From Haliotis rubra (lineage: Eukaryota), in contig NW_025767146.1 of NCBI RefSeq assembly GCF_003918875.1, positions 2,790,001 to 2,854,000 on the forward strand: DNA of 64,000 nucleotides, in the 5' to 3' direction. Positions 2,299-35,520 of the stretch are shown in pieces. The position numbers and the translations under genes were made by a program. Under the pieces are notes generated by a model. The model saw only the letters and a list, made by a program, of their open reading frames with translations, did no database searches and was not told the origin of the DNA. Within the stretch, counting starts at the first letter, position 1. Each line of letters begins with the position of its first letter.

Positions 2299-2410
2299 AA
2301 GAAATACGGCACTTCCAGAGGAGGCAAGGATTCTTTTCGTCGCCCAACCGGAGCTCCCAGAGGTAACCCCGGAAGAGGCACCCCCAGCCGTTCCCATACA
2401 ACCTTCGACA

Positions 2411-3660: not shown

Positions 3661-3669
3661 GCCAAAAAT

Positions 3670-8835: not shown

Positions 8836-10075
8836 ATGAGTTATAAACGTGAGGGACACAAGCCCCCTCGCCCTCCTCCCCCCAAAGCCAGCCTGGGCTC
8901 CAAGCTGACTTCAGGGGCAATAGGCATCAGCTTCAAGGCGCTGGAGGAGGAAGATGATGAGGATCTCACTAGCTTCACGGGAAAGTTTGATAAGGTTGTA
9001 GAGGAGGCTCACAAGTCCCAGCGCTCTAGTCATGAAAGAAGAGGGTCATCAGGGGAACCAAAGCCCATCAGGATAGGATCAACCTCCATTCAAGATGCAA
9101 AACTCACTAAACTTCACTCACACTCAAAATCCTTAGATGATGGTAACTCATCTCCTACCAAGAAGAGCTTTTTTGAATATAAAGATATCATTTCAGATAT
9201 TAAACATAAGATAACTGACACCAAAGAAAAGATAACTGATTCAATAAGCAAAAGAATAGAAGAATTTTCCGGGGACTCAAGTTCCAATCCCAGCCCTGAA
9301 AATGAGCAGCCTTTTGATGATGACATGTTGGTTACAGAGAGAGAGAACATTTTGACTGACATAAGGCCAGAAAGGGCACCTGTCGTTCAAGATGCTTTGC
9401 CCAGTTCAGTGAAAGATGACTTAGTTGACCATTTCCAGGAATGTGAGGAAGACACAAGTAGTTGGAGGAAGGAGGACGAAGAAGAGGATGACATAGATGT
9501 TGTTGATGAGTACTTTGGTATGAACTCAATGGAGGAATTTAGTTCCAACCCTGGATTGAATGTGTCTGTGAGGCAGAGATCAAAACTAAAACGTTTAGTC
9601 AATAAAAACTCTAAACCTGTAACGTCAGCAACTGTCTCTATGTCAACTCTAATGGACACCAGTCCAGCGGAGGAAGAACCACAGTTTAATCTAGAAGTAC
9701 GAGATGAAAATAACGAACCTGTGGTTGAGAAAACTGAGCCAGCACCAAAACCAGACCTGGAGATAGCAAGTAACCATGACAAGAAAATGCCAACCACATT
9801 GGAGGTGGTGAGGCCAACAGAGAAGACCGTCCCCATACAGAAGCTGGTAGCAGTAGCTGTGTGTGTGTTTGCTTATCTCATCATGCCCGCTCCCCTCCTA
9901 TGTGTCGGGGCTGATGATGGGTGTCATGCTGGCGTCCGCTGGATGGGCCTTGTATCTCTGGTACAAACAACCACCAAAACAACATGATGATTTCAAACTC
10001 ACCCCACTTGAAGATTTACCTCCCATGTATATTCCTCAGATGAGGGATCCAGTCAAAGATGATGGTATTTATAAG
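8836..10075 (+). CDS. TEX2: TEX2 first coding exon (disordered N-terminus plus transmembrane hairpin)
   Basis: Acceptor tttcag at 8831, ATG at 8836, donor gtaag at 10076. Removing one C at 9886-9888 gives AYLIMPLPSYVSGLMMG. Confidence 0.88.
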
Positions 10076-16000: not shown

Positions 16001-19000
16001 TGTCCGTGTGTGAATGTGTGTACCCAACCTGTGTGTTTAGTTGACACTACATGTACAGGTAAGAGTGTCTATGTGTGAATGTGTGTACACAGCCTGTGTG
16101 TTAAGTCCACACTGCATGTACAGGTAAGAGTGTCCGTGTGTGAATGTGTGTACCCAACCTGTGTGTTTAGTTGACACTACATGTACAGGTAAGAGTGTCT
16201 GTGTGTGAATGTGTGTACACAGCCTGTGTGTTTAGTTGACACTACATGTACAGGTGAGAGTGTCTGTGTGTGAATGTGTGTACACAGCCTGTGTGTTTAG
16301 TCCACACTGCATGTACAGGTGAGAGTGTCTGTGTGTGAATGTGTGTACACAGCCTGTGTGTTTAGTTGACACTAAATGTACAGGTGAGAGTGTCTGTGTG
16401 TAAATGCGTGTACACAGCCTGTGTGTTTAGTTGACACTACATGTACAGATGAGCGTGTCTGTGTGTGAATGTGTGTACACAGCCTGTGTGTTTAGTTGAC
16501 ACTACTGTGTAAGAGTGTCTGTGTGTGAATGTGTGTACACAGCCTGTGTGTTTAGTTGACACTACATGTACAGGTAAGAGTGTCTGTGTGTGAAGTGTGA
16601 CACAGCCTGTGTACAGGTGAGGTGAGAGTGTCTGTGTGTGAATGTGTGTACACAGCCTGTGTGTTAAGTCCACACTGCATGTACAGGTAAGAGTGTCTGT
16701 GTGTGAATGTGTGTACACAGCCTGTGTGTTTAGTCCACACTGCATGTACAGGTAAGAGTGTCTGTGTGTGAATGTGTACACAGCCTGTGTGTTTAGTTGA
16801 CACTACATGTACAGGTGAGAGTGTATGTGTGTGAATGTGTGTACACAGCCTGTGTGTTTAGTTGACACATGTACAGGTAAGAGTGTCTGTGTGTGAATGT
16901 GTGTACCCAACCTGTGTGTTTAGTTGACACTACATGTACAGGAAAGATTGTCTGTGTGTAAATGTGTGTACACAGCCTGTGTGTTTAGTCCACACTGCAT
17001 GTAAAGGTGAGCGTGTCTGTGTGTGAATGTGTGTACACAGCCTGTGTGTTTAGTTGACACTGCATGTACAGGTGAGAGTGTCTGTGTGTGAATGTGTGTA
17101 CACAACCTGTGTGTTTAGTTGACACTACATGTACAGGTAAGAGTGTCTGTGTGTGAATGTGTGTACACAGCCTGTGTGTTTAGTCCACACTGCATGTACA
17201 GATGAGAGTGTCTGTGTGTGAATGTGTGTACACAGCCTGTGTGTTTAGTTGACACTACATGTACAGGTAAGAGTGTCTGTGTGTGAATGTGTGTACACAG
17301 CCTGTGTTTAGTTGACACTACATGTACAGGTGAGCGTGTCTGTGTGAATGTGTGTACACAACCTGTGTGTTTAGTTGACACTACATGTACAGGTAAGAGT
17401 GTATGTGTGTGAATGTGTGTACACAACCTGTGTGTTTAGTTGACACTGCATGTACAGGTAAGAGTGTCTGTGTGTGAATGTGTGTACACAGCCTGTGTGT
17501 TTAGTTGACACTACATGTACAGGTGAGCGTGATTGTGTGTACACATTGAAGGGTCCTTTCACTGGGAAAAGATGAAAGCAAGCAAATATGGATGGGAGAC
17601 TTGGAAGTTTGGATCACATGCAAGTCATTCTGACTACTGTATGAGTGATTAGTTCTGTAATTTAAACTACCAGTATGAAGGAAGTCCCTGAATCTTCAGG
17701 AATCTGCTGGTCTCTGGGTGTCTTTAGCATTAGTTAGGGAACGCAAAAAATTTCCCTTAGAAAACGTAAACCACAACTCACTCACTCTTAATGGAAATGT
17801 TGGCAGGTCACCCATAACAGACTCTGATGAGGAGGACAGCGCGGAGTCCTCCACAGACGAAGAGGAGGAAACCCCAACCACTGATGAAAGGTTAGTAGTG
17901 TAGCAGTAGTAGAGCTGTTACTGTCAACAGCATGTGTTATGTTGATATGTGGAGCTGTTACTGTCAACAGACTTCATTATGTTGATGTGTGGAGCTGTTA
18001 TTGTCGACAGACTTCATTATGTTGATGTGTGGAGCTGTTATTGTCGACAGACTTCATTATGTTGATGTGTGGAGCTGTTTCTGTTGACAGATGTCATTAT
18101 GTTGATGTTGTGGATGTGTGGAGCTGTTACTGTCCACAGACTTCATTATGTTGATGTGTGGAGCTGTTACTGTCAACAGACTTTTTTATGTCGATGTTGT
18201 GAATAGTTGGATCAATGGATGCTAACACTGACACCATCCCTTGTTTCAGTGCAGCATCAGGTGGCACCACCAGCAAGAAGTTCCTGCGATATCTGGACAA
18301 GATCACTCAGAGTAAATATTTCCAGCAGGCCACTGAGTATAAATATATCAAGCGGGCCATGGAGGGGGTGTCCAACACTCCTCTCATCCTCACAGTGGAA
18401 GTCAAGACCCTGGTTGGAACCATGGCCCTCAACATTCCGCCCCCACCTACAGACAGATTCTGGTACGAACACAACACATTTTATCAATTTTTATTGCTTG
18501 AAATTTAGCAAAGGGTCATTACCTGTATGCTAAAGGTTAAACAGTGAGGATGTCCCTGGAATCAAACACAGAAGGATTATCGTGCAGTCACCCTTGTAGG
18601 CACACAAGGGTCTGAGACTGATACCACTCGCCAGAAACTGCCAGATGTGTCTATATGACTGAGAACCTGTCTATTTATTTCAACACTTGGATGTTATAGA
18701 TTTGCAGTGACACTCTTGTAATCATTTCATATGGTATTGTTAAGGATTATTGTGTTGAGTTCTAATTTATGAGGTTTTGAGGAAGTGTTTTTTGTTGTAT
18801 TAAATATATTGAAAATAATTATACCCATGCTTTATAAATACAGTGCAACCGTATAGTGAAACATTCATCTTGTTAGTTGCAGTTACAAACATTTATTCAT
18901 GCATCACCACTCATGTTTAAGGTATGGTTTCCGTGGCAACCCTAGATTATGGCTGTCAGCTAAGCCGAAAGTTGGTGAGCGTGAGGTAACATTCAACTAT

Positions 19001-21245
19001 ATCACAGAATGGATAGAGAAGAAGCTGTCGGTTGAGTTTCAGGTGAGACAATTGTAGTGGGATACTTACTTGCTGGTTGATGTATGGAAGCTCTCCTTCT
19101 AGGAAAAATGGGGTGGTGGAATAGCCTAATGGATAAAGCGTTTGCTTCCCCACATGGGTACTGCGTTCGAATTAATTGCTGGCCCAGAGGCTCTGCGCCC
19201 GGTTGTTATTGTATCGGGCCGGCAGTTTCAGATATTTGCAGGCTCTTGTGGCCTTCAGTAAATTATCTGTCCATTATTTTTTTTCAACTGGAATCTTTCC
19301 CATAATTTGTTTTCTTTATTAACATTCGGGAATGATCCATGATCCATCATGTTACGAATACCAGACAGTTTCACGTTCAGGTATTTCAGCACTTTGTGCA
19401 TAGGAATGTCAACACCAGTCTTTAACAAATATAACCTTCTCTCTGCACCATAGGCTTCGCTAACTGATTTTGTAGAAACTGTGTGAAACTGTGTACAGTG
19501 TAGTCTATTTTGTTTTTATTGGTTTGATTTCAACAAAATAGGCCTGCAGATTTCATTCAGGGCCTGCAGATTTTAAAGCCCTCACTCACTCTGGGAAAAA
19601 TACTTTGATTCAGAAAGAAGGGTGTATTGATTGTTAAATATAAAGAACCACAGGGTCTACTAGTTACAATATGAAACTGATTGGGAAACTAACACTCCTT
19701 AGTGACTTGTCATGGATCCACGAAAATATTAAATTATTGAGACAGAAACTAGAGATCTACTGAGATTGGCTTCAGTGTGTGTGGTTAGCTACTCCGTGGT
19801 GATCACCTACGGTCAATTTCGTTTCAGATTGTAATTTATTGATTACTTTCCTGTGCTTAAGTCATATTAATACAGAAATGTGAGTTAGAAATGTTTTGAA
19901 ACAACTATGGTATTTGACAAGTTTGAGCGCAGCAATCTGTTTCCTGCACCATTTTAGGAATGAACCAATGCATGATGTCTATTCTCATAGTGAATTCGTG
20001 GTGAATTCATACATAACACAACAGTCACGTGTGATGGTATTCAGATTACTGCTAACTACTTATACCTAATTTGACCCTCCACATAATATGCAAACTAAAT
20101 AAGATCAAAAATCACTATTAAGCACCCTAAAAACATACCACAGATATAGATAAATTTGTTTTGGACACACCCATGAAGATTTGGGTTAGAATTGGTCTTC
20201 AGCAGTGTGCGGGGGCGGTAGGGTAGCCTGGTGGTTAAAGCGTTGGCTCGTCACGCCGAAGGCCCGGATTCGAATCCCCACATGGGCACAATGTGTGAAG
20301 CCCATTTCTGGTGTCCCCCGCCGTGATGTTGCTGGAATATTGCTAAAAGCGGCGTAAAGCCATACTCACTCACTCACTCACTCAGCAGTGTGCGAAATAG
20401 TTTCCAAATTTTGCTAACCAGACCGGCTAGCCATGCCTGAAAGTTACTAGCCCACAAAATTATTCCCTGGCCACGGGTTTCATCATTAAGCTGCTAAATA
20501 TGATGAATTTTTGATCAGACCATAATCTTGCATGATTTAAAAGTGTATTATATTTATTACTTAACACGCAGGAGAGAGTGATATAGATGTATTTACAAAA
20601 TGACCCATGAAAATTCACTAGCCATTTGGGCCATTGACTGTGGAGATTTACTGGCCCGACTGGATTTTTACTAGCCCGTGGCTATTTCGAACACTGGTCT
20701 TCAGCAACCCATGCTTGTGATAAGAGTCAACTAACTGGATCAGGGTTGTCAGGCTCGCTGACTTGTTTGGCACATGTCATCGTATCCCAATTGCATAGAT
20801 TGATGCACATGCTGTTCATCACTGGATTGTCTGGTCCAAACTTGATTATAGTTGGAATATTGCTGAGTGCGGCGTTAAACAACAAACAAACAAATGTTTT
20901 GACACAGTGCATAAAATAAATGTTATGTGACAGACTTTTGTGTGGTATTCTCTATGCCCTGTGTTCTCCATTTCTACTGATTTTAGAGTGAAAACAATAT
21001 GGTTGTACATCGTTGTCATATTTTGTCATGCATCTACTGAAGAGAAGTTGAGAAGTTCCTAATGCTGAAATTTGTTTGGATTGATACATGTACACCAGTC
21101 TAAAACTAAGAGGAGGAATTGTATTTGTTTCAGCGTGTGTTTGTTATGCCCAACATGGATGACCTGGTTATCCCAATCCTTCTCCCCCGGCATCCTCCCT
21201 GAAGCCATTCCTGTTGCCACGCCGTCCGCCACCACCTCGGTCTGA
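8836..21245 (+). CDS. TEX2: Testis-expressed protein 2 (TM + PH-like + SMP domain ER contact-site lipid transfer protein), proximal-last-exon isoform
   Basis: Exons with GT-AG borders and consistent phases: 8836-10075, 11812-12712, 13248-13474, 17807-17890, 18250-18462, 18922-19042, 21134-21202 (21245 if one C is removed). Recognised motifs: KGWMNE, KRIWSKKYPIC, LFARTGREKEDW, WVNAMVGRIFWDFL, PPPPTDRFWYGFR, FVMPNMDD. Frameshifts at ~9887, ~12273 and probably ~21186. Confidence 0.93.
10268..11404. repeat. 22-bp minisatellite (cagctcttcacatatacacatt)n, ~50 copies, TEX2 intron
   Basis: Direct periodicity with degenerate edges. Confidence 0.95.
11812..12712 (+). CDS. TEX2: TEX2 PH-like domain / start of SMP domain exon
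   Basis: GWMNELLEY...KYPICV...KEDWYKRF, frame change near 12273, then ...KLQRKLSKIH|gtaagt. Confidence 0.92.
12701..12993. repeat. 47-bp tandem repeat, ~6 copies, spanning a TEX2 exon/intron junction
   Basis: Units start at 12701, 12748, 12795, 12842, 12889, 12936 and 12983 (partial). Confidence 0.95.
13488..17545. repeat. 65-bp GT-rich satellite, ~60 copies, TEX2 intron
   Basis: Unit tacatgtacaggtgagagtgtctgtgtgtgaatgtgtgtacacagcctgtgtgtttagtccacac. Confidence 0.97.
17911..18200. repeat. 40-bp tandem repeat, ~7 copies, TEX2 intron
   Basis: Unit ggagctgttactgtcaacagacttcattatgttgatgtgt. Confidence 0.93.
20203..20696. mobile_element. hAT-type MITE
   Basis: TIR cagtgt(g/t)cgaaatag / ctatttcgaacactg. 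8-bp TSD gtcttcag at 20195-20202 and 20697-20704. Confidence 0.85.
20212..20381 (+). mobile_element. tRNA-derived SINE family A
   Basis: A box tagcctggtgg, B box gattcgaatcc, (ACTC)n tail, 13-bp TSD tcagcagtgtgcg. Confidence 0.92.
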
Positions 21246-21249
21246 CACT

Positions 21250-21500
21250 GACAACAAAGCACTCTGCAACAGGGCACCCAGATCTTCATACAGACAACAA
21301 AGCACTCAGCAGCAGGGCACTCTGATGTGCCCACAGCATACAAAGCACTCTACAGCAGGGTACTCTGATGTGCCTACAGCATACAAAGCACTCTACAGCA
21401 GGGTACTCTGATGTGCCCACAGCAGACAAAACACTGAAACGGGGCATCCAGATCCTGCCCACAGCCAACAAAGCACTCGGGTACCCTGTTCTTCCCAAAG
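21250..21500. repeat. 43-bp tandem repeat, ~6 copies, just after the proximal TEX2 stop
   Basis: Unit caaagcactctacagcagggtactctgatgtgcctacagcata. Confidence 0.85.
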
Positions 21501-21889
21501 CAAACACCGTAAATTGTAGCCAAAATAGCAATCAGTTCATCACCCAGTGAGTTGCACCCAATTACATCAGAGCCAAGCTGCAGGATAGCCTGTCTTTGCT
21601 GCACTGCTTGACACACAGCTCTCCTATAGATGCCAGAATAGCCTGCTCTGCACTTGAACCTTTCCCCTGAGACTGCACCTTTCTATGTGCAAATGTGTAC
21701 TGATACAAAGCTGTCCAGCATTATCAGATATTGTCCCTGACATGATGCATAGCAAGCCTCTTCAGTGCTCCACAAAGGAACCAGTCATCAGAACCATCTC
21801 CTGTCACGTTCCCACCTGCATAATTAGTCCTTGTTTATAATGCCTTGTACTATTAATGTATCTTAGCTTCAGTTGTGATAGTGATACCT

Positions 21890-23702
21890 ATCGCGGTAGT
21901 AGATTCTTGCATGCTACAGTGATGTTTCTGTGACAATCAGACTGTATGTGTATGTGACAGTAACAAGACTTGCTACAGTGATGTTTGTGTGACGGTCAGA
22001 CTGTATGATGCTGTAGATGATAGTAACATGACACACTACAGTGATGTTTGTGTGACGGTCAGACTGTATGATGCTGTAGACGAGAGTAACACGACACGCT
22101 ACAGTGATGTTTGTGTGACGGTCAGTCTGTATGATGCTGTAGACGAGAGTAACATGACACGCTACAGTGAGATGTTTGAGTGACGGTCAGACTGTATGAT
22201 GCTGTAGATGATAGTAACATGACACGCTACAGTGAGATGTTTGTGTGACGGTCAGACTGTATGATGCCGTAGACGATAGTAACAAGGCAGGCTACAGTGA
22301 TGTTTGTGTGACAGTCAGACTGTATGATGCTGTAGACGATAGTAACACGACACGCTACAGTGATGTTTGTGTGACGGTCAGACTGTATGATGCTGTAGAC
22401 GATAGTAACAAGGCACGCTACAGTGATGTTTGTGTGGTCAGTCAGACTGTAACCGATGCTGTAGACGATGTGTAACACGACATGATGCTGTACAGTAACC
22501 GACCGTGATGTTTGTGTGACGGTCAGACTGTATGATGCTGTAGATGATAGTAACACGACACGCTACAGTGATGTTTGTGTGACGGTCAGACTGTATGATG
22601 CTGTAGATGATAGCTACAGTGATGTTTGTGTGACAGTCAGACTGTATGATGCTGTAGACGATAGTAACAAGGCACGCTACGGTGATGTTTGTGTGACGGT
22701 CAGACTGTATGATGCTGTAGACAATAGTAACAAAGCACGCTACAGTGATGTTTGTGTGACAGTCAGACTGTATGATGCTGTAGACGATAGTAACAAAGCA
22801 CGCTACAGTGATGTTTGTGTGACGGTCAGACTGTATGATGCTGTAGACAATAGTAACACGGCATGCTACAGTGAGATGTTTGAGTGACGGTCAGACTGTA
22901 TGATGCTGTAGACAATAGTAACAAGGCACGCTACAGTGATGTTTGTGTGACGGTCAGACTGTATGATGCTGTAGACGATAGTAACACGACACGCTACAGT
23001 GAGATGTTTGTGTAGTGACTCAGACTGTATGATGCTGTAGATGATAGTAACAATGTTTGTGTGGACGGTCAGACTGTATGATGCTGTAGGCGAGTAACAC
23101 GACCGCGATGATGTTTGTGTGACGGTCAGACTGTATGATGCTGTAGATGATAGTAACATGACACGCTACAGTGATGTTTGTGTGACGGTCAGACTGTATG
23201 ATGCTGTAGACGATAGTAACACGACACGCTACAGTGATGTTTGTGTGACGGTCAGACTGTATGATGCTGTAGACGATAGTAAGAAAGCACGCTACAGTGA
23301 TGTTTGTGTGACGATCGGTCTGTATGATGCTGTAGACGAGAGTAACACGACACGCTACAGTGATGTTTGTGTGACGGTCAGACTGTATGATGCTGTAGAT
23401 GATAGTAACATGACACGCTTCAGTGATGTTTGTGTGACGGTCAGACTGTATGATGCTGTAGACGATAGTAACAAAGCACGCTACAGTGATGTTTGTGTGA
23501 CGGTCAGACTGTATGATGCTGTAGACGAGAGTAACAAAGCATGCTACAGTGATGTTTGTGTGACGATCGGTCTGTATGATGCTGTAGACGAGAGTAACAC
23601 GACACGCTACAGTGATGTTTGTGTGACGGTCAGACTGTATGATGCTGTAGACGAGAGTAACATGACACGCTACAGTGAGATGTTTGTGTGACGATCAGTC
23701 TG
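21890..23702. repeat. 63-bp minisatellite, ~28 copies
   Basis: Unit gctacagtgatgtttgtgtgacggtcagactgtatgatgctgtagacgatagtaacacgacac. Confidence 0.96.
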
Positions 23703-23775
23703 GATCGTACTCTTGAAAATGGGAGCAGTGTATGCCCCGCCTAAGTCTACTGAAACATGAGGTAGTTTGTTCATA

Positions 23776-23881
23776 TACTGAGGGGAAAAAATAAGCGATA
23801 CAAAGCTTGTGAAGAAACCTTGGAAAAATATAAAGGAACACTTGTGCTTTCATGTGATCCCTTATTTTTTTTCCCTCAGTA
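23776..23881. mobile_element. ~106-bp Tc1/mariner-like MITE
   Basis: TIR tactgaggggaaaaaataagcgat / atcccttattttttttccctcagta. Confidence 0.65.
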
Positions 23882-25615
23882 CATGTGTACTAGTGTAGCA
23901 GGGAAGGTGTACTGGTGTAGCAGGGAAGGTGTACTGGTGTACAGAAAAGACAGACACTGGAATTGCTGAGTACTCTACTTGCAGGGATATTGTCAGTTGT
24001 TGCAGATTATTTATTTTCGCAATTATTTATTGACATGTTGCATATGTTTTTGTATTATATAACGTGTATATTTTAGCAGTCTAATGTGCCAAGGAAGGTA
24101 CGCTTTTGTTGAATGCAGAATAGCATGTATGATGCTGTACTTCATTAAACTTCTTTGAGTCGCGTTTTAGAAGATGGGAAGTGCAGGAATGACAAATTTT
24201 ATGGATAACAACTTCTTTTATTTCATGAGTGCAACATTTCGATATAGATTGTCATTATTTTACTTCATTATACCTTGAAAAGTGTTTTAACTGATGAAAT
24301 AATTGAATGGATGTTTTAAGTTATGATGAGAATGATGTTTTGCAGTTGTAAACATTTGGGCTATGTAGCTAGTCTGACTACTGGTGTGTTGGTCCGGACA
24401 TGAGAGCCTTATGGTAACTGTACTCACACAGGGCAGTGGGCCAGTGTGTAGCCAACACTGGAACAATCTGTTCTTCAGATAGGTCAATGCTTGTCTTGTT
24501 GAAACACAAGAAACGTTGGCATCTAACATTTTGAACTGAACAGCTGTCACAGTAGCTTTCAATGAAATACAAGTTCCTGATCACAGATTTACACAATCAT
24601 ATTTTGCCAAACATTTTATTTTTGTAATATTACATGAAATATGGTATTTTATGATGTTTGTAAAATAGTTTTAATTGAAATTTTTTAGTACAATTCTATG
24701 GTTCTACCTGTCATTACTGACATAAGATAAGGTGGCTTTGGTTCTGTGAATCTTGAATGTAACTGTTGTCCAGAAAGTGTGTCCCAGGAGTCCTTAGAAG
24801 CATGGCTGTGGGCTGGAGGACACTGGGGACCACCACAGAATGACAGCTGTTGTCTGAGACTGTCCATGAAGCACTGACACACCACCAGCTGAATGCTGTA
24901 GGCAGGACGCTGTAAATTAAGGCTGTCAGTAAGGTGTAGAACACCATTAACTCACCAACTGATCTTGTATCGGAAATACAATCAAAATATGGTATTTTAT
25001 ATATATGTTAGCTATGTCCTTCCCATGCTGCTCTAAAATAGAAAGAAACACGGCATCTTGTGGCAAGTGAGCATTGTGTCCAGGCAATGGGAATCTGAAG
25101 TGTTGTCATCTCTCAACGTCATGCACTGTTAATTTTGCACCAGCAGTCTTGTAGTGTTATACATCTGTTATATATAGTAATACAGAGGAGATGTGGTGGT
25201 ATTTTTATATGACTGTCATTAGAGTGTCACTCAGAATAACATCATGGTTTAACACTGTCCTGCATACAGGAGTGAACTTCATGTGATTTATACCCTTTAT
25301 TTGGCTCTGTCGTAAAGCTTTGCACCTGGATGTATGCAGAGAAAATTGATTATAGGAAGCGTTGTACATGTGGCAGACGTTCCACTGCAAAAAGCAGTTG
25401 GCAACAAGTATAAACTGTATTTTGTATGGACTGAAATGCATGATGGATTCTTTAGTATTTGAAGCCTTTGCCTCATTCAACTCAGATCCTTTGATCCGAT
25501 ATGATACCTCTCTGTATAGATCTGACACCCCTCTAGAAAGTGACATCAGGTGACCTTGAGGTAGTCCACTTAGGGAATCCATTTAAGGTTGATGCTTCAG
25601 TTTCAGAAAGTTTCA

Positions 25616-25781
25616 GGGGCGGTGGGGTAGCCTAATGGTTAAAGCGTTGGCTCGTCACGCCGAAGACCCGGGTTCGAATCCCCACATGGGTACAATGTGT
25701 GAAGCCCATTTCTGGTGTCCCCCGCCGTGATGTTGCTGGAATATTGCTAAAAGCGGCGTAAAACCAAACTCAGTCAGTCAG
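25616..25781 (+). mobile_element. tRNA-derived SINE family A
   Basis: Near-identical to the 20212 copy. TSD tcagaaagtttcag. Confidence 0.92.
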
Positions 25782-26830
25782 TCAGAAAGTTTCAGAAACA
25801 AACAGAAAACAAACAGTTCTGAATGTAAATAATAAAGGCCATGCCATTAACATCTTGCATAAGAATCCACAAGATTCAAGTCCTCTTCAGGTCTTGCATA
25901 GAGGGGCTGTCAGATGTTCAGAACGATGTCATATTGGAGTTAAGCATGTTTATGAGATTGTGTTTCCTAAGCCTTGTTCTCCCAGGTAAGATGTGCATCG
26001 CGTGTCATAATATTGACTATATGTATAGGTGCCCATGCTTGTCTTCCTGTGCTTTAATCAAACTGTTAGCACTCCTGACTGGAACAATAAGCTTGCAGGA
26101 AAGTTATGCAAGCTTGAAACACAGACATGCCAAAAACTTAAATAGCATGGAACTATTATTCTTGATTTTAACAGTAGATATATCTACAGTATTGTCACTT
26201 TGTGCTTTCCCTGTGCACCTGTAAGGTAGGTATACAGAGTGGTACGAAGAAAATGGGTGTTTTCGTGAGCTTTCCAGTGTGTTGACAGTTATGTCCCTTA
26301 ACTTTAATTTGCTTAAACCATTTGAACATAATTCTTGGTTAGATGCATCATAATAGAAGTGTAGAAGACAGCTGTGTTCAGTCATCGATTCCCCTTGCTT
26401 TGTGACTCAGTATGGTGCATGCATCATAGATGTTGACAGCAGTAACCTGTATGTTTCTGCCACATGGATAGGAACTGTGAGGGTCAATTGTTAAATTGCT
26501 ACTGTATTAATTACTGAGTTTTGAAATGGCTCTTGTGGGAATTCCTTTTGAAGGAAAACCAAAATCAATTAACAAAAATATATTTTATTTGATCTTAATG
26601 TCTGTTCATGAAAACCATAAATGTTTCATCATAATATGAGGTGTTTGTGTAGAACTTTCAGTCATGAGGATATCATTTTGATAATTTCTGTCTCATGTCA
26701 GGTGAGCTACTGCTTTGTGTTTTATCGAAAGGTTCTGATGTTTTTTCTGTGTTCAGATGGTGATGTGGGTATCAGCTGTTGCAATCTGAGCATGCTCGCA
26801 TAAGATGTCAGTTATTAGTGTACTAGGACA

Positions 26831-26926
26831 CTGTCCACAAAAGCCGACTTAGTGCTAAGGTGATCCTAACTCCCATACTATAGAGATTTGTGACAATCAT
26901 AGCGCTAAGATCACTTTGTTGAACAG
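26831..26926. mobile_element. Small degenerate palindromic MITE
   Basis: ctgtccacaaaag...cttagtgcta / tagcgctaag...ctttgttgaacag form imperfect inverted arms. Confidence 0.45.
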
Positions 26927-27629
26927 TCTGCTGGTGTCATTTTGAATTCAAGTCTTCTCTAGAAAAAGCTGTCAGAATTGATGGTGGTGATTTAAAAGTT
27001 TAGTAAATGATTATCCTACTTTTGTTGCATTTGATCCTGTTCTAACCTGGAGTCATTATAAGAATTTGATGGTTTTATAAAACCTCCACTGCTCAGAACT
27101 GAAATCCTGGAGCATTGTCAGTTTAGGTATTCTATCTGATGGTTGTTTTATTCATCACATATCTATTTTCTTGTAATTTTACCATGTAGATGTATGTATT
27201 TTTATTTGAAGATGGATTGTTTGTAGTACTTATTTGTTGGTATGTATATATGTGTTGAAGATTGTTGAAGTTTATATTCCTGTGTGTTGAAGCATGTATC
27301 TTGGAATCAAGTAGTATATTGATGTGCAATGTGTCCACGATCTGTATGCAAGAACTGGCCAAAACTTCGTTCTAGTTGTGTATATCAGCTGCCCCTTTTC
27401 AGTGTATATCAGCTGCGCCTTTTTTTTATATGTATATGAGATGCCCACTTTTCCGTTTATATCAGCTGCCCCTTTTCTGTGTGTATCAGCTGCCCCCTTT
27501 TGTCTGTTTAGAAATACTGGGAAATCAGTGGCAGGGTTATTTATCTTTAAGGTCCCATGGGAATGTTTCACAAGAAGATCATGGTGCTACTATTGTAACT
27601 CCCATCCCACAAATAGTATTATATAACAG

Positions 27630-30600
27630 GGACCTGATCCTCCAGCGAACTGTCCCAACAGACCTGATCCTCCAGCAAACTGTCCCTACAGACCTGATCC
27701 TCCAGCAAACTGTCCCGACAGACCTGATCCTCCAGCAAACTGTCCCGACAGACCTGATCCTCCAGCAAACTGTCCCGACAGACCTGATCCTCCAGCAAAC
27801 TGTCCCAACAGACGTGATCCTCCAGCAAACTCTCCCGACAGACCTGATCCTTCAGCAAACTGTCCCGACAGACCTGATCTTTCAGCAAACTGTCCCGACA
27901 GACCTGATCCTCCAGTAAACTCTCCCGACAGACCTGATCCTCCAGCAAACTCTCCCGATAGACCTGATCCTTCAGCAAACTCTCCCGACAGACCTGATCC
28001 TCCAGCAAACTGTCCCAACAGACCTGATCCTCCAGCAAACTGTCCCGACAGACCTGATCTACAGCAAACTGTCCCGACAGACCTGATCCTCCAGCAAACT
28101 GTCCCGGCAAACCTGATCCTCCAGCAAACTGTCCCGACAGACCTGATCCTCCAGCAAACTCTCCCGACAGACCTGATCCTCCAGCAAACTCTCCTGACAG
28201 ACCTGATCCTCCAGCAAACTCTCCCGACAGAATTGATCCTCCAGCAAACTGTCCCAACAGACCTGATCCTCAAGCAAACTCTCCCGACAGACCTGATTTA
28301 CAGCAAACTGTCCCGACAGACGTGATCCTCCAGCAAACTGTCCCGACAGACCTGATCCTCCAGCAAACTCTCCCGACAGACCTGATCCTCCAGCAAACTG
28401 TCCCGACAGACCTGATCCTTCAGCAAACTGTCCCGACAGACCTGATTTACAGCAAACTGTCCCGACAGACCTGATCCTCCAGCAAACTCTCCCGACAGAA
28501 TTGATCCTCCAGCAAACTCTCCAGACAGACCTGATCCTCCAGCAAACTCTCCCGACAGACCTGATCCTCCAGCAAACTGTCCCGACAGACCTGATCTCAG
28601 CAAACTGTCCCGACAGACCTGATCCTCCAGCAAACTCTCCCGACAGACCTGATCCTCCAGCAAACTCTCCCGACAGACCTGATCCTCCAGCAAACTCTCC
28701 CGACAGACCTGATCCTCCAGCAAACTGTCCCGACAGACCTGATCCTCCAGCAAACTGTCCCGACAGACCTGATCCTCCAGCAAACTCTCCCGACAGACCT
28801 GATCCTCCAGCAAACTCTCCCGACAGACCTGATCCTCCAGCAAACTCTCCCGACAGACCTGATCCTCCACAGCAAATCTCCAGCAAACTCCCCGACAGAC
28901 CTGATCCTCCAGCAAACTGTCCCGACAGACCTGATCCTCCAGCAAACTCTCCCGACAGACCTGATCCTCCAGCAAACTCTCCCGACAGACCTGATCCTCC
29001 AGCAAACTGTCCCCGACAGACCTGATCCTCCAGCAAACTCTCCCGACAGACCTGATCCTCCCGACAGACCTGATCCTCCAGCAAACTCTCCGACAGACCT
29101 GATCCTCCAGCAAACTGTCCCGACAGACCTGATCCTCCAGCAAACTGTCCCCGACAGACCTGATCCTCCAGCAAACTGTCCCGACAGACCTGATCCTCCA
29201 GCAAACTGTCCCGACAGACCTGATCCTCCAGCAAACTCTCCCGACAGACCTGATCCTCCAGCAAACTCTCCCGACAGACCTGATCCTCCAGCAAACTGTC
29301 CCGACAGACCTGATCCTCCAGCAAACTCTCCCGACAGACCTGATCCTCCAGCAAACTCTCCCGACAGACCTGATCCTCCCGACAGACCTGATCCTTCAGC
29401 AAACTGTCCCGACAGACCTGATCCTCCAGCAAACTGTCCCGACAGACCTGATCCTCCAGCAAACTGTCCCGACAGACCTGATCCTCCAGCAAACTGTCCC
29501 GACAGACCTGATCCTCCAGCAAACTCTCCCGACAGACCTGATCCTCCAGCAAACTCTCCCGACAGACCTGATCCTCCAGCAAACTGTCCGACAGACCTGA
29601 TCCTCCAGCAAACTCTCCCGACACCTCCAGCAAACTCCAGACCCTGATCCTCAGCAAACTCTCCCGACAGACCTGATCCTCCAGCAAACTCTCCCGACAG
29701 ACCTGATCCTCCAGCAAACTCTCCCGACAGAGCTGATCCTCCAGCAAACTCTCCCGACAGACCTGATCCTCCAGCAAACTGTCCCGACAGACCTGATCCT
29801 CCAGCCAACTCTCCCGACAGACCTGATCCTCCAGCAAACTCTCCCGACAGACCTGATCCTCCAGCAAACTCCCGACAGACCTGATCCTCCAGCAAACTCT
29901 CCCGACAGACCTGATCCTCCAGCAAACTCTCCCGAAAGAGCTGATCCTCCAGCAAACTCTCCCGGCAGACCTGATCCTCCAGCAAACTGTCCCGACAGAC
30001 CCGATCCTCCAGCAAACTCTCCCCTACAGATCCTCCAGCAAACTGTCCCGACAGACCCGATCCTCCAGCAAACTCTCCGACTGACTGATCCTCCAGCAAA
30101 CTCTCCCAGCAGAAAGACCTGATCCTCCAGCAAACTCTCCCGACAGACCTCCAGCAAACTCTGATCCTCCAGCAAACTCTCCCGACAGACCTGATCCTCC
30201 AGCAAACTGTCCCGACACACCTGATCCTCCAGCAAACTGTCCCAACAGACCTGATCCTTCAGCAAACTGTCCCGACAGACGTGATCTACAGCAAACTGTC
30301 CCGACAGACCTGATCCTTCAGCAAACTGTCCCGACAGACCTGATCCTTCAGCAAACTGTCCCGACAGACCTGATCCTCCAGCCAACTCTCCCGACAGAAT
30401 TGATCCTCCAGCAAACTCTCCCGACAGACCTGATCCTCCAGCAAACTCTCCCGACAGACCTTATCGTCCAGCAAACTCTTCCGACAGACCTGATCCTTCA
30501 GCAAACTCTCCTGACAGACGTGATCCTCCAGCAAACTGTCCCGACAGACCTGATCCTTCAGCAAAATGTCCCGACAGACCCGATCCTCCAGCAAACTATC

Positions 30601-31120
30601 CCCACAGACCTGATCCTCCAGCAAACTGTCCCGACAGACCTGATCCTCCAGCAATCTCTCCCGACAGACCTGATCCTCCAGCAATCTCTCCCGACAGACC
30701 TGATCCTCCAGCAAACTGTCCCGACAGACCCGATCCTCCAGCAAACTATCCCGACAGACCTGATCCTCCAGCAAACTCTCCCGACAGACTTGATCCTCCA
30801 GCAAACTCTCCCGACAGAATTGATCCTCCAGCAAACTCTCCCGACAGACCTGATCCTCCAGCAAACTATCCCGACAGACCTGATCTTTCAGCAAACTGTC
30901 CCGACAGACCTGATCCTCCAGCAATCTCTCCCGACAGACCTGATCCTCCAGCAAACTGTCCCGACAGACCTGATCCTCCAGCAAACTCTCCCGACAGAAT
31001 TGATCCTCCAGCAAACTCTCCCGACAGAATTGATCCTCCAGCAAACTGACCCGACAGACCTGATTTACAGCAAACTGTCCCGACAGACCTGATCTTTCAG
31101 CAAACTGTCGAAACAGACCT
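27630..31120. repeat. 30-bp minisatellite, ~115 copies, degenerate tail to ~31460
   Basis: Unit gacctgatcctccagcaaact(g/c)tcccgaca. Confidence 0.97.
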
Positions 31121-32128
31121 TATCCCTATGGACTATAGGACTCTCCAGATCCTCCAGGAGACTGTCCCTTAAGACCATATGATTCACCCCATCCTCCAGC
31201 AGACTGTCCCGACAGATTTGATCCTCCAGTAAACAGTCAAAACAGACCTGATCCTCAAACAGACTGTCCCTGAAGATGATAGAACCCTCCAGATCCAACA
31301 GTTGACTGCCCTTACAGATCTGATCCTCCTGGAGACTGTCCCTTAAGATCATATGATTCACCCCATCCTCCAGCAGATTGTCCCTACAGAGTATCGGACT
31401 CTCCTGATCCACCTGTAGACTGTCCCTACATACTATGGGACTCTCCTGATCCTCCTGTCATACAAGACGTTATCAAGGGGTAGCCCAGTGCAGACGTTCC
31501 TGGTCTAGGCTTCAGGTGCAACCACCATGGGTTTTTATACAGGGAGAGAATGACATGAGATTAGGCTAGAGTGTTAGAAGTTAGCATGCAGCAGTCACTT
31601 GTTGACAGACTTGTTAGGACACTGAAAAGTCTCTTATGTCCCTTGAGGAGAAACAAAATGACTTGGGCTAGTCGGCGACTTGTAATTTGTATACCTGAAG
31701 TGTTCAGTGGTCTACTTCAGGCCTTTCAGGAAAAGGAAACGAAATGACAGACAGGTGAGATAGGATTTACAGTATCAATACGAAGAGACTGTTTTGATTA
31801 TTGTGATTTCTGCATTGTTTGTCAAAGATTGCTCGCCATCTGTACTAACATTGAAACATGAATACATAAAGTATGTACAACAAACCAAGTGTGTTTAGTT
31901 TCAATACAGTGTATGTACCCTATTTTTAGACAACTACTTTTACGAAGTAGAAGCAATTCATTACCGTTGAGCGGTCTGTCAGTGAGATTCATTCCAAGTC
32001 TTGCCTTTCTTACAATTACTGCTTGGATCATCAAGCTGTATAAATAGGGGCATAACTACATATCTTTGATTTGTAAATATAGATGACCAGGTCTTTGAAT
32101 GGAATTTAGAAGTGATACACATAAGGAA

Positions 32129-32278
32129 GGGAATTTTATGGATGTCAACTTCTTTATTATGAGGAACACAATGTTTCAGAATAAACTTACTCCTTCATCA
32201 GATGATGAATGAGTAAGTAAGTACATACTCACATACATGTTCCTCATAATAAAGAAGTTGACATCCCTATAATTCCCT
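32129..32278. mobile_element. Inverted-repeat relic with a degenerate hammerhead-like core (Penelope-like element end)
   Basis: 29-bp perfect arms ggatgtcaacttctttattatgaggaaca / complement. The minus strand 32201-32170 reads CTGATGA-aggagtaagtttattct-GAAAC and is followed by AATAAA. Confidence 0.55.
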
Positions 32279-32404
32279 CAATATACCCACCATATAGATG
32301 GAATATTGCTCAATATACATGATGATTCTTATCTTCCTGATAAACAGAGTTTCTTTATGTCGCAACCGACATTATAAGTCAGAACATGTTCATTTGTTCT
32401 TGTT

Positions 32405-32550
32405 CACTGACGTGAGTGAGACATATCATCATTCCCAGTTGCTTGGGTTGATGCTCTAGACATGAATTATGGGGTTGTCTGGTCCAGACTTGATTATTGA
32501 ATGTCTTCCATCATAAAGCCGGAATATTGATGTGTGGCATTAAGGAACTA
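32405..32550 (+). mobile_element. Degenerate 5'-truncated SINE family B
   Basis: ttgtctggtccagacttgattat...ggaatattgatgtgtggcattaa matches the family B 3' half. Confidence 0.6.
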
Positions 32551-32551
32551 T

Positions 32552-33347
32552 CAGAGCTCCAGATAAGCTGCGTATTTGTGTATACTACGCTATAGAAAAG
32601 TTGAAATACGCAAGAAAAATAAATGCCAGCGTATGAAAAACACTAAATATTTACGTTTACGCTATGTTAAAATAAGAATGAGTATTTACCCAATACATCA
32701 AAATTATGTTGGTATCGTATCAATTCAAGACAATTGAAACAAACTTTTCCATCTCCAAATATTCGCGATTAAAATATTCTTGAAAATTCTAAACGCAATT
32801 AAGATGCTCAATGCAGATAGAATACCAGTCATTGTTTGTTAACCCTTCACTGGTTGGTCAATCTATAAATAGCGACTAGTCAATTAGCTGTTTCCTCCGT
32901 ACATGTCCTGTAAACAAAGCAAGCATGGTCAAAAGCTTCCATACGCTCAAAGTAAAATATCTAGGGTTCTTTACGCTACAAACATAAAACAACTTCATTA
33001 GAGGACTGCTGGATGAACTTATATTATGCTGTTTCTAAATCATAATCAATTCCCGGTGATATCTTAAATGAACTTGTAACATTAGCTGTTCTCGGCGAGG
33101 TAGTGAAAAAACTCGATGGGAACAAGGTTTTGAGAAAAAACAGCAATTGCTACGTGGAAAAGAAAATATCCATGGTTAATTTTGAATAAAAAAAGGTCAT
33201 ATGAGGTCATGTTGTAGTGTGTGTCAGGCACACCTCTTACACTTGTTATTTGAAATGAATACCCGGATCTTGAAATCGGAAATACCCCCTTAGTTTAAAA
33301 AGTATGGGTATCATACCCACATGGCCAAAGGCTTATCTGGAGCTCTG
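32552..33347. mobile_element. CAG-ended TIR non-autonomous element (hAT-like)
   Basis: 17-bp perfect TIR cagagctccagataagc. Subterminal TACGCA/TACCCA motifs. Confidence 0.85.
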
Positions 33348-34083
33348 AACAATTAAGCAAATTCATTTATTGTCATCTTCAGCTGATTGCAAGAGCTTTC
33401 TATGTGTAATGCCCATCGTGTTTGCAGTCAGCTGCTGTGCCACTTGGGGACATGTTAAACGTCACCATGTCAGTTATAACTAACATATTCATAGGTTTGC
33501 CAAGGCAAAAATACTCAGAATGCTATCACAATCCTTTTCCAATAATGATACTCTATTGAATTACCAATAATTTTGTCCAGTATCACAACCTTATTGCACT
33601 AGTAAGAGTACCTCCTCTTCTTTCCCCATACTGGCCGAAATGTGTCTGCCCTCTTTAAACACTATGCTGAAGGATCAACGGTTAATGACAGAGTTTTGTT
33701 GCAAAGTTAGCTATGATTTGTGAGGTGTTTACTCTAGTCAGTGTAGCACATCCTCGATTAACCCATTGTGATCAAGTAGCTGAAGGCAGCTGCACTCACA
33801 GGGCACCAAGGTTGGATGTACAATGACATTTGACTGTTTCAACAGGACTTCAAATTAAACTGCAATGCGAAGATACCAGTAAAAAGCAAATGATCAAATG
33901 TGTGGTAGTGGGAGTATGTATTACATCACAGAATAAACCAAGAGGCTAATAGTGAGGTGTTTCTCAGTGTTCACAAATGTTTGACCTAGAACTGGCAAAA
34001 TCATTGTATTGGCAGTAACCTTATAGCAAAGAAATCTTACTTATTTGTTGTCCTCAACTGTCAAATTATAGGTTTATGTTTGT

Positions 34084-34229
34084 AATATTTGGTGTTCAGA
34101 AATTGGTGGTAAATACTGATTGAAACACTCGTAATATGTACAGATATCGTCTGTTGAATATTTGGTGTTCAGAAATTGGTGGTAAATACTGATTGAAACA
34201 CTCATAATATGTACAGATATCGTCTGTTG
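34084..34229. repeat. 73-bp tandem duplication, followed by a SINE-like tail and (TTCA)n to 34307
   Basis: Two near-identical copies. Confidence 0.85.
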
Positions 34230-34741
34230 ATGGAACCTCGCCACTATTGGCTGGAAAATTGTTGATGCGGCATAAGGCAATATTCATTCATTCATTCATT
34301 CATTCATTATTGATGGAATAGCATCTTTTTTGCAAGTATGGTGTGTGTATTGCTAAATGTGATCTAATCCAGTGAATGGCTCATGTCTTCATGATGCAAA
34401 AAAACTTCAGTTCTTTCAACTCCCATATAAAACTGTTTCAGTCTGCTGTCATATAAACACCAAAGCTTGTTTTCTATAGATATTAATAATACATAAAAAG
34501 CCCAAAAAATAGATATTCTTTACTATATACATGTATTACTGAAATATTTACTGTATATTTCCAGAAGAAATGTGATATAGCTTTTGTGGTATTGGCAAGT
34601 TCAGACTGGATCTAACTTTCACTAAATTGGAATTCTTTAGCACCTTGGACCTGTGTCAATGCAGACTTTCTTCAAACAATAAACTAACAGTGATACAAAT
34701 GAGGCATTAAACACATTATGATTCTAGCTTGGTGTTTACAG

Positions 34742-34816
34742 AGAGTATTTGTCCTGCCCAACATGGATGATGCCATGGTTCCCTTCTTTCCTGCGATTGT
34801 TCTGGGCCCTGGATGA
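34742..34816 (+). CDS. TEX2: TEX2 alternative (duplicated) terminal coding exon RVFVLPNMDDAMVPFFPAIVLGPG*
   Basis: Acceptor tgtttacag at 34741, phase 0. The translation is paralogous to the 21134 exon (RVFVMPNMDDLVIP...). Confidence 0.8.
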   Translation, partial: RVFVLPNMDDAMVPFFPAIVLGPG

Positions 34817-35350
34817 AACTCTCCATTGATGTTGGGGATAAAGGTATCACCCACCACTAGGTCAAGAACCAGGTTTACAGACAATATGCTTACAATTAAA
34901 CTAATTATTTTCAAAATAACCTATGAATTGTGATTTCTTCCAAGTTAGTCAACTTTCTTACTTATATGGGGCATCTGTATTGGATTTGAAGATCATGCTT
35001 GGTGTCTTGGCAGATCGCATGTCATCAGACCCAAAACATGTTCTCATAATTCAGAAACTGTGACAACCAGTTTCGGAATTTGGCTGTAATATTGCCGACT
35101 GCACCATTTAACATTTCACTCCTTGCAGTTATAGATAGGTTGTTGACAGTCTCAATTCCAACAAGGATCCATGTGTATATGTAATGACTAGACTCTCCAT
35201 AATGATAGCTTTGAAAAAAACTGATGATAAAATGTCAACTTTGAATGATTGCTTTGTGCTAATGAATATGATCGAGATCTAACCAAGCATGTGTTTGTAA
35301 ATTAAAGTTGTATGTGATATCCTGTCCTAAGTTACGCCTGCTCAACAGGA

Positions 35351-35520
35351 CTGACTGACTGACTGAGTTAAGTTTTACGCCGCTTTTAGCAATATTCCAG
35401 CAATATCACGGCGGGGGACACCAGAAATGGGCTTAACACATTGTGCCCATGTGGGCAATCGAACCCGGGTGTTCGGCATGACGAGTCAACGCTTTAACCA
35501 CTAGGCTACCCAACCGCCCC
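35351..35520 (-). mobile_element. tRNA-derived SINE family A
   Basis: Reverse complement of family A. TSD tgctcaacagga. Confidence 0.92.

What the first reader, a model, noticed from the sequence alone, without database searches (positions are those of the whole stretch)
21134..34816. TEX2 has two duplicated, mutually exclusive terminal coding exons 13.6 kb apart
Seen: exon A (21134) encodes RVFVMPNMDDLVIPILLP... and exon B (34742) encodes RVFVLPNMDDAMVPFFPAIVLGPG*. Both are phase 0 with good acceptors. Amino acids are conserved while third positions differ (cgt gtg ttt gtt vs aga gta ttt gtc), suggesting purifying selection on both. They complete the SMP domain and give different tails and 3' UTRs. 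Exon B is invisible in the ORF track. I do not know of this arrangement in TEX2, but cannot check the literature.
Basis: partly seen in the sequence, partly recalled or inferred. Interest (0 to 1): 0.75.

Follow-up and report, generated by a model that had tools for sequence, protein, structure and literature searches.

The report
Abalone TEX2 duplicated alternative last exons
An abalone lipid-transfer gene (TEX2-like) carries two homologous copies of its last coding exon, used as alternatives to give two protein tails; this is real and conserved, but it is an ordinary kind of alternative splicing that RefSeq already annotates in two sister species.

Summary
Exon A (from 21134) and exon B (34742-34816) both follow AG acceptors in phase 0 after the donor at 19042. 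Both open with RVFV-x-PNMDD. No other TEX2 exon is duplicated in the window.

The window is a Haliotis (abalone) TEX2-like gene. Exon B is intact (24 codons plus TGA, no indel, same acceptor) 10-11 kb downstream of exon A in H. asinina, H. rufescens and H. cracherodii. RefSeq already lists isoforms X1 (966 aa, A tail) and X2 (954 aa, B tail) in the last two species. Octopus bimaculoides has the same proximal/distal layout. Five other molluscs showed no second copy within 10 kb downstream.

Structure models place the shared start of both exons inside the SMP fold. The tails differ: A is proline-rich and ends in [S/T]-x-V, while B is short and hydrophobic.

Correction: exon A as assembled carries a +1 frameshift. 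Its conserved frame runs to 21245 (…PGILPEAIPVATPSATTSV*).

I got no RNA evidence for this species, because the runs I laid behave like genomic DNA.

C-terminal swaps by tandemly duplicated 3' exons are a known, common class. The scan had not noted TEX2 before, though it has noted other duplicated-exon cases in this genome.

Verdict: real, ordinary, low interest.

The parts
8836..10075 (+). First coding exon of the TEX2-like gene (N-terminal region and hydrophobic hairpin). It contains a +1 frameshift at about 9888 relative to congeners.
   Evidence: tblastn of H. asinina TEX2-like P0178 on the window; local alignment to L001-L003; sequence.
11803..12715 (+). Coding exon for the PH-like region and the start of the SMP domain. 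It has a -2 frameshift in a (GT) run at about 12274 relative to congeners.
   Evidence: weak Pfam PH_SMPa hit.
13221..13475 (+). SMP-domain coding exon (approximate limits).
   Evidence: tblastn.
18248..18466 (+). SMP-domain coding exon (...NIPPPPTDRFW; approximate limits).
18922..19042 (+). Penultimate coding exon. It ends ...SVEFQ in phase 0, with donor gtgaga at 19043. This donor is shared by exons A and B.
   Evidence: 100% amino-acid identity to three Haliotis species.
21134..21245 (+). Proximal terminal exon A, coding part. As assembled it stops at 21202. The conserved frame reads RVFVMPNMDDLVIPILLPGILPEAIPVATPSATTSV, then TGA at 21243-21245.
   Evidence: it matches the X1 / H. asinina tails.
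21185..21189 (+). C-run carrying one extra base relative to H. asinina, H. rufescens and H. cracherodii. Probably an assembly indel or a private allele.
   Evidence: Alignment A3; split tblastn HSPs 21134-21187 and 21186-21242.
34667..34741 (+). Conserved intron end upstream of exon B: ctaac branch-point-like site, pyrimidine-rich stretch, and acceptor ...gtgtttacag.
   Evidence: 31-39 of the last 40 nt are identical across Haliotis species; bin identity is 0.76 versus H. rufescens and 0.93 versus H. asinina.
34742..34816 (+). Distal terminal exon B, coding part: RVFVLPNMDDAMVPFFPAIVLGPG plus TGA.
   Evidence: It is orthologous to the C-terminal exon of RefSeq isoform X2 in H. rufescens and H. 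cracherodii.
35749..35767 (+). Two AATAAA hexamers, the first on the + strand after exon B. Candidate poly(A) signal for the B transcript (inferred only).
   Evidence: They lie in a conservation peak, 64/74 identical to H. rufescens in bin 35717-35791.

Best explanation
This is the 3' end of an abalone (Haliotis) TEX2-like gene, which encodes an ER-anchored SMP-domain lipid-transfer protein. Its last coding exon was tandemly duplicated, and the two copies serve as alternative last exons.

The donor at 19042 (phase 0) can join the proximal acceptor at 21134 (exon A) or skip 13.6 kb to the distal acceptor at 34742 (exon B). Each exon carries its own stop and presumably its own 3' UTR and poly(A) site, so one mRNA can hold only one of them.

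Both exons re-encode the same structural piece of the SMP domain: the end of the last helix, the invariant V-x-P-N-M-D-D loop and a short strand. After that they differ. Isoform A has a proline-rich tail of about 22 residues, modelled with low confidence, that ends in [S/T]-x-V. This looks like a class I PDZ-ligand consensus. Isoform B has a hydrophobic tail of about 10 residues without that ending.

Shown here: the homology, the shared phase, conservation in four Haliotis genomes, both isoforms in RefSeq for two congeners, and the position in the modelled fold.

Inferred: that both exons are used in this species, how the choice is regulated (competition between the proximal 3' splice site and poly(A) site and the distal exon), and any role of the tails in partner binding.
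For: - Sequence and phase.
- Only the terminal exon is duplicated, at E 7e-5.
- Similarity is confined to the coding start.
- Identity as TEX2-like, with closest full-length hits from Haliotis.
- RefSeq X1 and X2 in H. rufescens (XP_046337217.2, XP_046337218.2) and H. cracherodii (XP_071106588.1, XP_071106589.1) are identical to residue 934, then carry A-type or B-type tails. The 12-aa length difference equals 36 versus 24 codons.
- Exon B is found by tblastn in H. asinina (unannotated there), H. rufescens and H. cracherodii, 9.8-11.3 kb after exon A, always 24 codons plus TGA after ...tttacag.
- Against H. rufescens, exon B has 63/75 identity and no gaps. The sequence just downstream falls to about 0.5 identity, and most flanking bins contain indels.
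- Octopus bimaculoides has the same proximal/distal pair, each used by a different public gene model.
- AlphaFold2 models of both isoforms give an SMP/TULIP fold (best PDB match Mmm1 5yk6, E 3e-8, then Mdm12, E-Syt2, TMEM24). The exon-encoded start is at pLDDT 77-90, and the A tail falls to 50-56.
- C-terminal swaps by tandemly duplicated 3' exons are a documented class, 77 of 236 human events: PMC9741552.
Against: - No RNA evidence was obtained for this species. The runs guessed to be RNA carry contigs that run straight across the 34742 acceptor at depth 3-7. They also cover the putative intron, so they behave like genomic DNA. No loose end at 34742 was among the rows listed.
- No abalone transcript fragment with either tail was found in the protein collections.
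- I could not inspect the transcript support behind the RefSeq X2 models.
- Against the nearer species H. asinina, exon B (0.87) is no more conserved than its flanks (0.85-0.93).
- pN/pS for exon B is about 0.5-0.8 on very few sites. 8 of 24 residues differ between the window and H. rufescens, against 3 of 36 for exon A.
- H. asinina RefSeq has only the A form.
- The window's own TEX2 coding sequence has three frameshifts relative to congeners. That leaves a small chance the gene is damaged in this genome rather than mis-assembled.
Confidence: 0.8

Rival explanations
1. Exon B is an old duplicate that is now a decaying or barely used relic. It is spliced only at noise level, enough to yield an automated X2 model, and it contributes no functional protein.
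For: - The B tail evolves fast: pN/pS about 0.5-0.8, with 8/24 residues changed between the window and H. rufescens.
- There is no conservation excess over flanks against H. asinina.
- H. asinina RefSeq lacks an X2 form.
- No transcript evidence was found here.
Against: - The frame, the length (24 codons), the stop and the acceptor are retained with zero indels in three diverged lineages. Flanking 75-nt bins mostly hold 1-3 gap events each.
- The first 10 codons, which fall in the fold, are nearly invariant.
- X2 was modelled independently in two species.
- Octopus keeps a comparable distal exon that a RefSeq model uses.
Confidence: 0.15
2. Exon B is not an alternative TEX2 exon at all. It is either a chance ORF resembling exon A, or a fragment of a second, partial TEX2 copy or of another gene.
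For: The similar stretch is short, about 14 residues.
Against: - tblastn E is 7e-5 within the window, and exon B has the same phase and an acceptor at the homologous codon.
- No other TEX2 exon is duplicated.
- The exon is at the same relative place in three other genomes and is the CDS end of the RefSeq TEX2-like X2 models.
- In H. rufescens and H. cracherodii the next called gene downstream is on the opposite strand.
Confidence: 0.03

Closest known systems
Tandem-exon-duplication-derived C-terminal substitutions (homologous alternative 3' exons), as catalogued for human genes and tropomyosins (PMC9741552, PMC8373072)
   Same: Two adjacent homologous exons share the same upstream donor and phase. 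Only one enters each mRNA. The isoforms are identical except for a homologous C-terminal region, and the swapped parts are exposed or disordered tails.
   Different: TEX2 does not appear in the main text of that paper (0 occurrences). Here the pair is seen only in abalones and an octopus. Usage has not been measured, and the distal tail evolves quickly.
RefSeq 'testis-expressed protein 2-like' isoforms X1 and X2 of Haliotis rufescens and H. cracherodii
   Same: The same gene and the same two terminal exons. The X2 tail RVFVQPNMDDVVVPIFPAFVPDSG is the orthologue of window exon B (16/24 identical).
   Different: These are automated models in other species. Nothing I found records that the two exons are duplicates of each other. 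The window species' B tail differs at 8 residues.
Mammalian TEX2 / yeast Nvj2, an SMP-domain lipid-transfer protein at ER contact sites (PMC9930140)
   Same: The same family by name and domain order. The C-terminal domain has an SMP/TULIP fold. The motif ...EFQ-x-x-x-V-x-PNMDD... is conserved from arthropods to vertebrates.
   Different: That paper does not discuss alternative C-terminal isoforms: a term search found one reference-list hit for 'isoform' and none for 'splice'. The function of the molluscan protein is untested.

Membership tests
TEX2 / Nvj2 family of SMP-domain proteins | C-terminal SMP (TULIP) lipid-binding fold | tested here: met
   AF2 models have mean pLDDT 79 and 75. Foldseek finds Mmm1 5yk6 at E 3e-8, then Mdm12, E-Syt2 4p42 and TMEM24 5tod. 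Pfam MMM1 scores 25.8 bits against a cutoff of 21.9 on the congener protein.
TEX2 / Nvj2 family of SMP-domain proteins | Closest relatives are proteins named TEX2 or TEX2-like, aligned over the full length | tested here: met
   H. asinina TEX2-like maps along all window exons at 80-100% amino-acid identity. The hit lists are dominated by 'testis-expressed protein 2(-like)' from molluscs to vertebrates.
TEX2 / Nvj2 family of SMP-domain proteins | PH domain upstream of the SMP domain | tested here: inconclusive
   Pfam PH_SMPa scores 19-22 bits, below the cutoff of 27.
TEX2 / Nvj2 family of SMP-domain proteins | N-terminal transmembrane hairpin anchoring the protein in the ER | not tested
   A hydrophobic stretch is visible around 9850-9960. 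No transmembrane predictor was run.
Tandem-duplicated, mutually exclusive alternative 3' exons | Two neighbouring exons are homologous to each other | tested here: met
   tblastn of A against B gives E 7e-5 in the window, with 10/14 residues identical and a 16-nt exact DNA match. The same pair is found in three other Haliotis genomes.
Tandem-duplicated, mutually exclusive alternative 3' exons | Both are compatible with the same upstream donor (same phase, functional-looking acceptor) | tested here: met
   The donor at 19042 is in phase 0, and both exons start at the homologous Arg codon directly after AG.
Tandem-duplicated, mutually exclusive alternative 3' exons | Each exon is found in mature mRNA, and never both together | tested here: inconclusive
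   RefSeq isoforms X1 and X2 in two congeners carry one tail each. For this species, the only runs available behaved as DNA and showed no spliced contig. No transcript fragments were found.
Tandem-duplicated, mutually exclusive alternative 3' exons | Both copies are conserved across species | tested here: met
   A and B are intact in four Haliotis genomes. Conservation of the B tail is weak.
Class I PDZ-binding C-terminus (considered for tail A only) | [S/T]-x-hydrophobic residue at the extreme C-terminus | tested here: met
   Endings are TSV (window, corrected frame), TLV, SSV, TAV (Lottia), SSV (Patella), TEV (Octopus) and TEL (Gigantopelta). The B tails end GPG, ASG or DSG.
Class I PDZ-binding C-terminus (considered for tail A only) | Actual binding to a PDZ domain | not testable with these tools
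   This needs a binding assay.

The most novel reading that the evidence does not exclude
The proximal/distal pair of TEX2 terminal exons could be an ancient molluscan switch, shared by gastropods and cephalopods and lost or unrecognised elsewhere. It would toggle a PDZ-ligand-like C-terminus and so redirect this ER lipid-transfer protein between membrane contact sites or partners in a tissue-specific way.
Probability: 0.12. Interest if true: 0.45.

Novelty: new member of a known kind. Interest (0 to 1): 0.2.

Why it matters
It adds TEX2 to the genes whose C-terminus is swapped through a tandemly duplicated last exon. It also suggests that the extreme C-terminal tail of this contact-site lipid-transfer protein is a regulated interaction module in molluscs.

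In practice it mainly helps annotation:
- The distal exon is missing from the H. asinina model.
- The two public Octopus bimaculoides models each use a different terminal exon.
- This window's assembly has three frameshifts in the gene.

It opens no new mechanism. Both protein isoforms are already in RefSeq for two abalone species.

Tried and rejected
1. RNA evidence. Two sequencing-run searches found no run on record as RNA. The single read-laying run (33700-37200, runs X1-X3 and X15) showed low-depth contigs collinear with the genome across the acceptor, so it was uninformative for splicing. In hindsight, the donor/exon A stretch would also have let me check the exon A frameshift.

2. Transcript fragments in the protein collections. 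Searches with exon 18215-18508 and with the last 64 residues of X2 returned only single-exon genomic ORFs from other animals. The exact look-up of X2 found nothing.

3. Partial gene duplication. Rejected, because no other exon is duplicated.

4. A second terminal exon in Patella, Lottia, Pecten, Ostrea and Babylonia. None was found within the gene plus 10 kb downstream. The search was limited by the flank size and by a fairly strict motif.

5. Pfam on single window exons was nearly blank. Identity came from homologues instead.

6. Deciding whether abalone B and octopus distal exons are orthologous. The shared part is too short (about 10 residues) for a tree, so I left this open.
Full report
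**Observation.**
- The penultimate coding exon (18922-19042) ends ...SVEFQ and is followed by gtgaga.
- Exon A begins at 21134 after ...tttcag and reads RVFVMPNMDDLVIPILLP....
- Exon B begins at 34742 after ...tttacag and reads RVFVLPNMDDAMVPFFPAIVLGPG, with TGA at 34814-34816.
- A DNA alignment of the two exons with 100-nt flanks shows similarity only over about 45 nt at the exon starts, including a 16-nt exact match. The flanks do not align.
- I ran tblastn of every TEX2 exon ORF against the window. Only the terminal exon has a second copy (E 7e-5 to 8e-5). Nothing else in the gene is duplicated.

So this is a single-exon duplication. It is neither a partial second gene nor a chance ORF.

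**What the gene is.**
- A representative-library search with the exon at 18215-18508 returned hundreds of relatives. In the full-length ones that reach this point, the C-terminus reads ...EFQ-[RK]-x-[FL]-V-x-PNMDD-..., from arthropods to vertebrates.
- A word search from the Lottia homologue's C-terminus gave named hits. 'Testis-expressed protein 2-like' from Haliotis asinina was among the closest.
- That protein maps along all window exons at 80-100% identity. The window is therefore an abalone TEX2-like gene.
- AlphaFold2 models of the C-terminal 330 residues of both congener isoforms have mean pLDDT 79 and 75. They match the SMP/TULIP folds of Mmm1, Mdm12, E-Syt2 and TMEM24.

**The decisive comparative result.** The 90% cluster of the H. 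asinina protein contains RefSeq isoforms X1 (966 aa) and X2 (954 aa) for both H. rufescens and H. cracherodii. Within each species, X1 and X2 are identical through residue 934 (...EFQRVFV). X1 then continues MPNMDDLAIPILLPGILPEAIPVATPSTTSSV, and X2 continues QPNMDDVVVPIFPAFVPDSG. The 12-residue length difference is exactly a 36-codon exon against a 24-codon exon.

I fetched the three genomic loci and ran tblastn on them. An exon B orthologue lies 9.8 kb (H. asinina), 11.3 kb (H. rufescens) and 10.8 kb (H. cracherodii) downstream of exon A. It is always 24 codons plus TGA, directly after ...gtgtttacag. In H. rufescens and H. cracherodii the called gene range ends exactly at exon B's stop. In H. 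asinina the exon is present but unannotated.

From my knowledge of NCBI's Gnomon pipeline, alternative isoforms are built from transcript alignments. X2 therefore implies spliced-read support in two species, but I could not inspect that evidence.

**Constraint.** Across the four genomes exon B has no indel and keeps its frame, stop and acceptor.
- Against H. rufescens it is 63/75 identical with no gaps. The 75 nt immediately downstream fall to 0.51, and most flanking bins hold one to three gap events. About 300 nt of upstream intron are also conserved (0.72-0.81).
- Against the nearer H. asinina, exon B (0.87) does not stand out from its flanks (0.85-0.93).
- Nei-Gojobori counts are tiny but consistent. 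For exon A, pN is 0.01-0.05 against pS of about 0.10. For exon B, pN is 0.11-0.16 against pS of 0.20-0.31.
- Change in B is concentrated in the last 14 codons. The first ten (R-[VI]-F-V-[LQ]-P-N-M-D-D) are nearly fixed.

So the structural start of exon B is constrained, and its tail only weakly.

**What the two exons encode.** The figures below come from the models of the congener isoforms.

| | X2 model | X1 model |
|---|---|---|
| Terminal exon starts at model residue | 307 | 295 |
| Last helix, ending in RVF | 291-309 | 279-297 |
| Short strand after the V-x-PNMDD loop | 315-318 | 304-306 |
| Mean pLDDT, 10-residue blocks | 90, 78, 71 (301-330) | 85, 77 (291-310) |
| Tail | short and hydrophobic | 56 then 50 over the proline-rich last 20 residues |

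In a 70-sequence alignment, V, P, N and the second D of this loop are invariant. Both exons therefore complete the same part of the fold and then diverge.

The A-type tail ends in [S/T]-x-[V/L] in abalones (TSV, TLV, SSV), Lottia (TAV), Patella (SSV), Octopus (TEV) and Gigantopelta (TEL). This fits the class I PDZ-ligand consensus. The B tails end GPG, ASG or DSG. A role in partner binding is my inference and is untested.

**Correction to exon A.** As assembled, the window reads ...ILLPRHPP* (stop at 21200-21202). The three congeners have one base fewer in the C-run at about 21185-21189. tblastn with the H. rufescens tail splits into two frames at that point. In the conserved frame the window encodes ...ILLPGILPEAIPVATPSATTSV, with TGA at 21243-21245.

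The window's TEX2 coding sequence has two further frameshifts relative to all three congeners:
- +1 at about 9888, within the hydrophobic hairpin.
- -2 in a GT run at about 12274.

The protein is otherwise 80-100% identical on both sides of each shift, and all three shifts sit in short repeats. I therefore read them as assembly indels. I could not check reads there.

**RNA evidence.** None could be obtained for this species.
- Neither run search found a run on record as RNA.
- I laid the contigs of three runs guessed to be RNA, with a DNA-like control, on 33700-37200.
- Those contigs run straight across the acceptor: X1 34645-35075, X2 34448-35350, X3 34685-35193. Depth is 3-7, with patchy cover of the putative intron as well. 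No loose end at 34742 was among the rows listed.
- They behave like low-coverage genomic DNA, so this neither supports nor refutes splicing.
- All four runs share variants against the window inside exon B: 34771 T>C (synonymous) and 34777 G>T (Met12 to Ile).
- Searches for abalone transcript fragments in the protein collections were blank.

**Wider distribution.** Octopus bimaculoides has the same layout:
- penultimate exon at L004:17779-17898;
- a proximal A-like terminal exon at 18878-18991 (...PGLPEDAVPSTICPPDGTEV*);
- a distal homologous one at 23207-23305 (RLLVLPNMDDLLIPIMINPVEEFLSLITTTVH*).

The UniProt model uses the proximal exon and RefSeq XP_014777264.1 uses the distal one. No second copy was found within the gene plus 10 kb downstream in Patella caerulea, Lottia gigantea, Pecten maximus, Ostrea edulis or Babylonia areolata. 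The shared part is too short to tell whether the abalone and octopus duplications are one event or two.

**Comparison with what is known.** Swapping homologous C-terminal regions through tandemly duplicated 3' exons is a documented and even enriched class. It accounts for 77 of 236 such events in human genes, and tropomyosins provide recurrent independent examples (PMC9741552). I found no paper describing this for TEX2. Both protein isoforms are nevertheless already public as RefSeq models for two congeners.

I therefore file it as a new member of a known kind. It is real, conserved within abalones and plausibly functional, but unsurprising.

Noticed in passing
window 9885-9890, 12270-12276, 21185-21189: Three frameshifting indels (+1, -2, +1) in the TEX2 coding sequence relative to H. 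asinina, H. rufescens and H. cracherodii. All sit in short homopolymer or dinucleotide runs, and the protein is otherwise 80-100% identical. They are probably assembly errors, and they would break any automatic gene model here.
   Followed up: partly
L001:35656-35730 (H. asinina): An intact exon B orthologue (RIFVLPNMDDVIVPFFPAVVLASG*) lies 9.8 kb downstream of the annotated end of the H. asinina TEX2-like gene. RefSeq has only the A isoform there.
   Followed up: yes
L004:18878-18991 and 23207-23305 (Octopus bimaculoides): Octopus TEX2 also has a proximal and a distal homologous terminal exon, 4.3 kb apart. Two public gene models each use a different one.
   Followed up: partly
window 35342-35520: A tRNA-like SINE copy downstream of exon B is absent at the orthologous place in H. 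rufescens. It is hugely repeated in the runs (summed contig depth 1e5-1e7), and small shares of words (0.07-0.08) are held by runs of other organisms.
   Followed up: partly
window 21254-21478: Four to five tandem copies of a 43-nt unit lie directly after the exon A stop, in the presumed A 3' UTR. The repeat is also present after exon A in the three other Haliotis loci (alignment A3).
   Followed up: no
window 10268-11409, 13637-17540, 21909-23702, 27631-31125: Large intronic or inter-exon satellites with units of 22, 65, 63 and 30 nt. The last two make up much of the 13.6 kb between exons A and B. They also produce long spurious ORFs on both strands.
   Followed up: no
window 34771 and 34777: All four laid runs differ from the window inside exon B. 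One change is synonymous (GAT>GAC) and one is Met12-to-Ile (ATG>ATT). Overall divergence from the window is about 2.5% in this stretch.
   Followed up: no
window 128-5187 (+): A run of long ORFs with reverse-transcriptase-like and recombinase-like sequence upstream of TEX2. It looks like a retroelement copy.
   Followed up: no
window 38878-39481 (-) and onward; L002:39993-45125 (-): A large gene lies on the opposite strand, convergent with TEX2 (1677-aa product in H. rufescens). It starts about 4-5 kb beyond exon B, so the B 3' UTR and that gene's 3' end may lie close together.
   Followed up: no
runs X1-X4, X22-X25 (study P1): Runs labelled 'RNA?' by guess hold intron and intergenic sequence at low, even depth, so they look like low-coverage genomic DNA.
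   Followed up: partly
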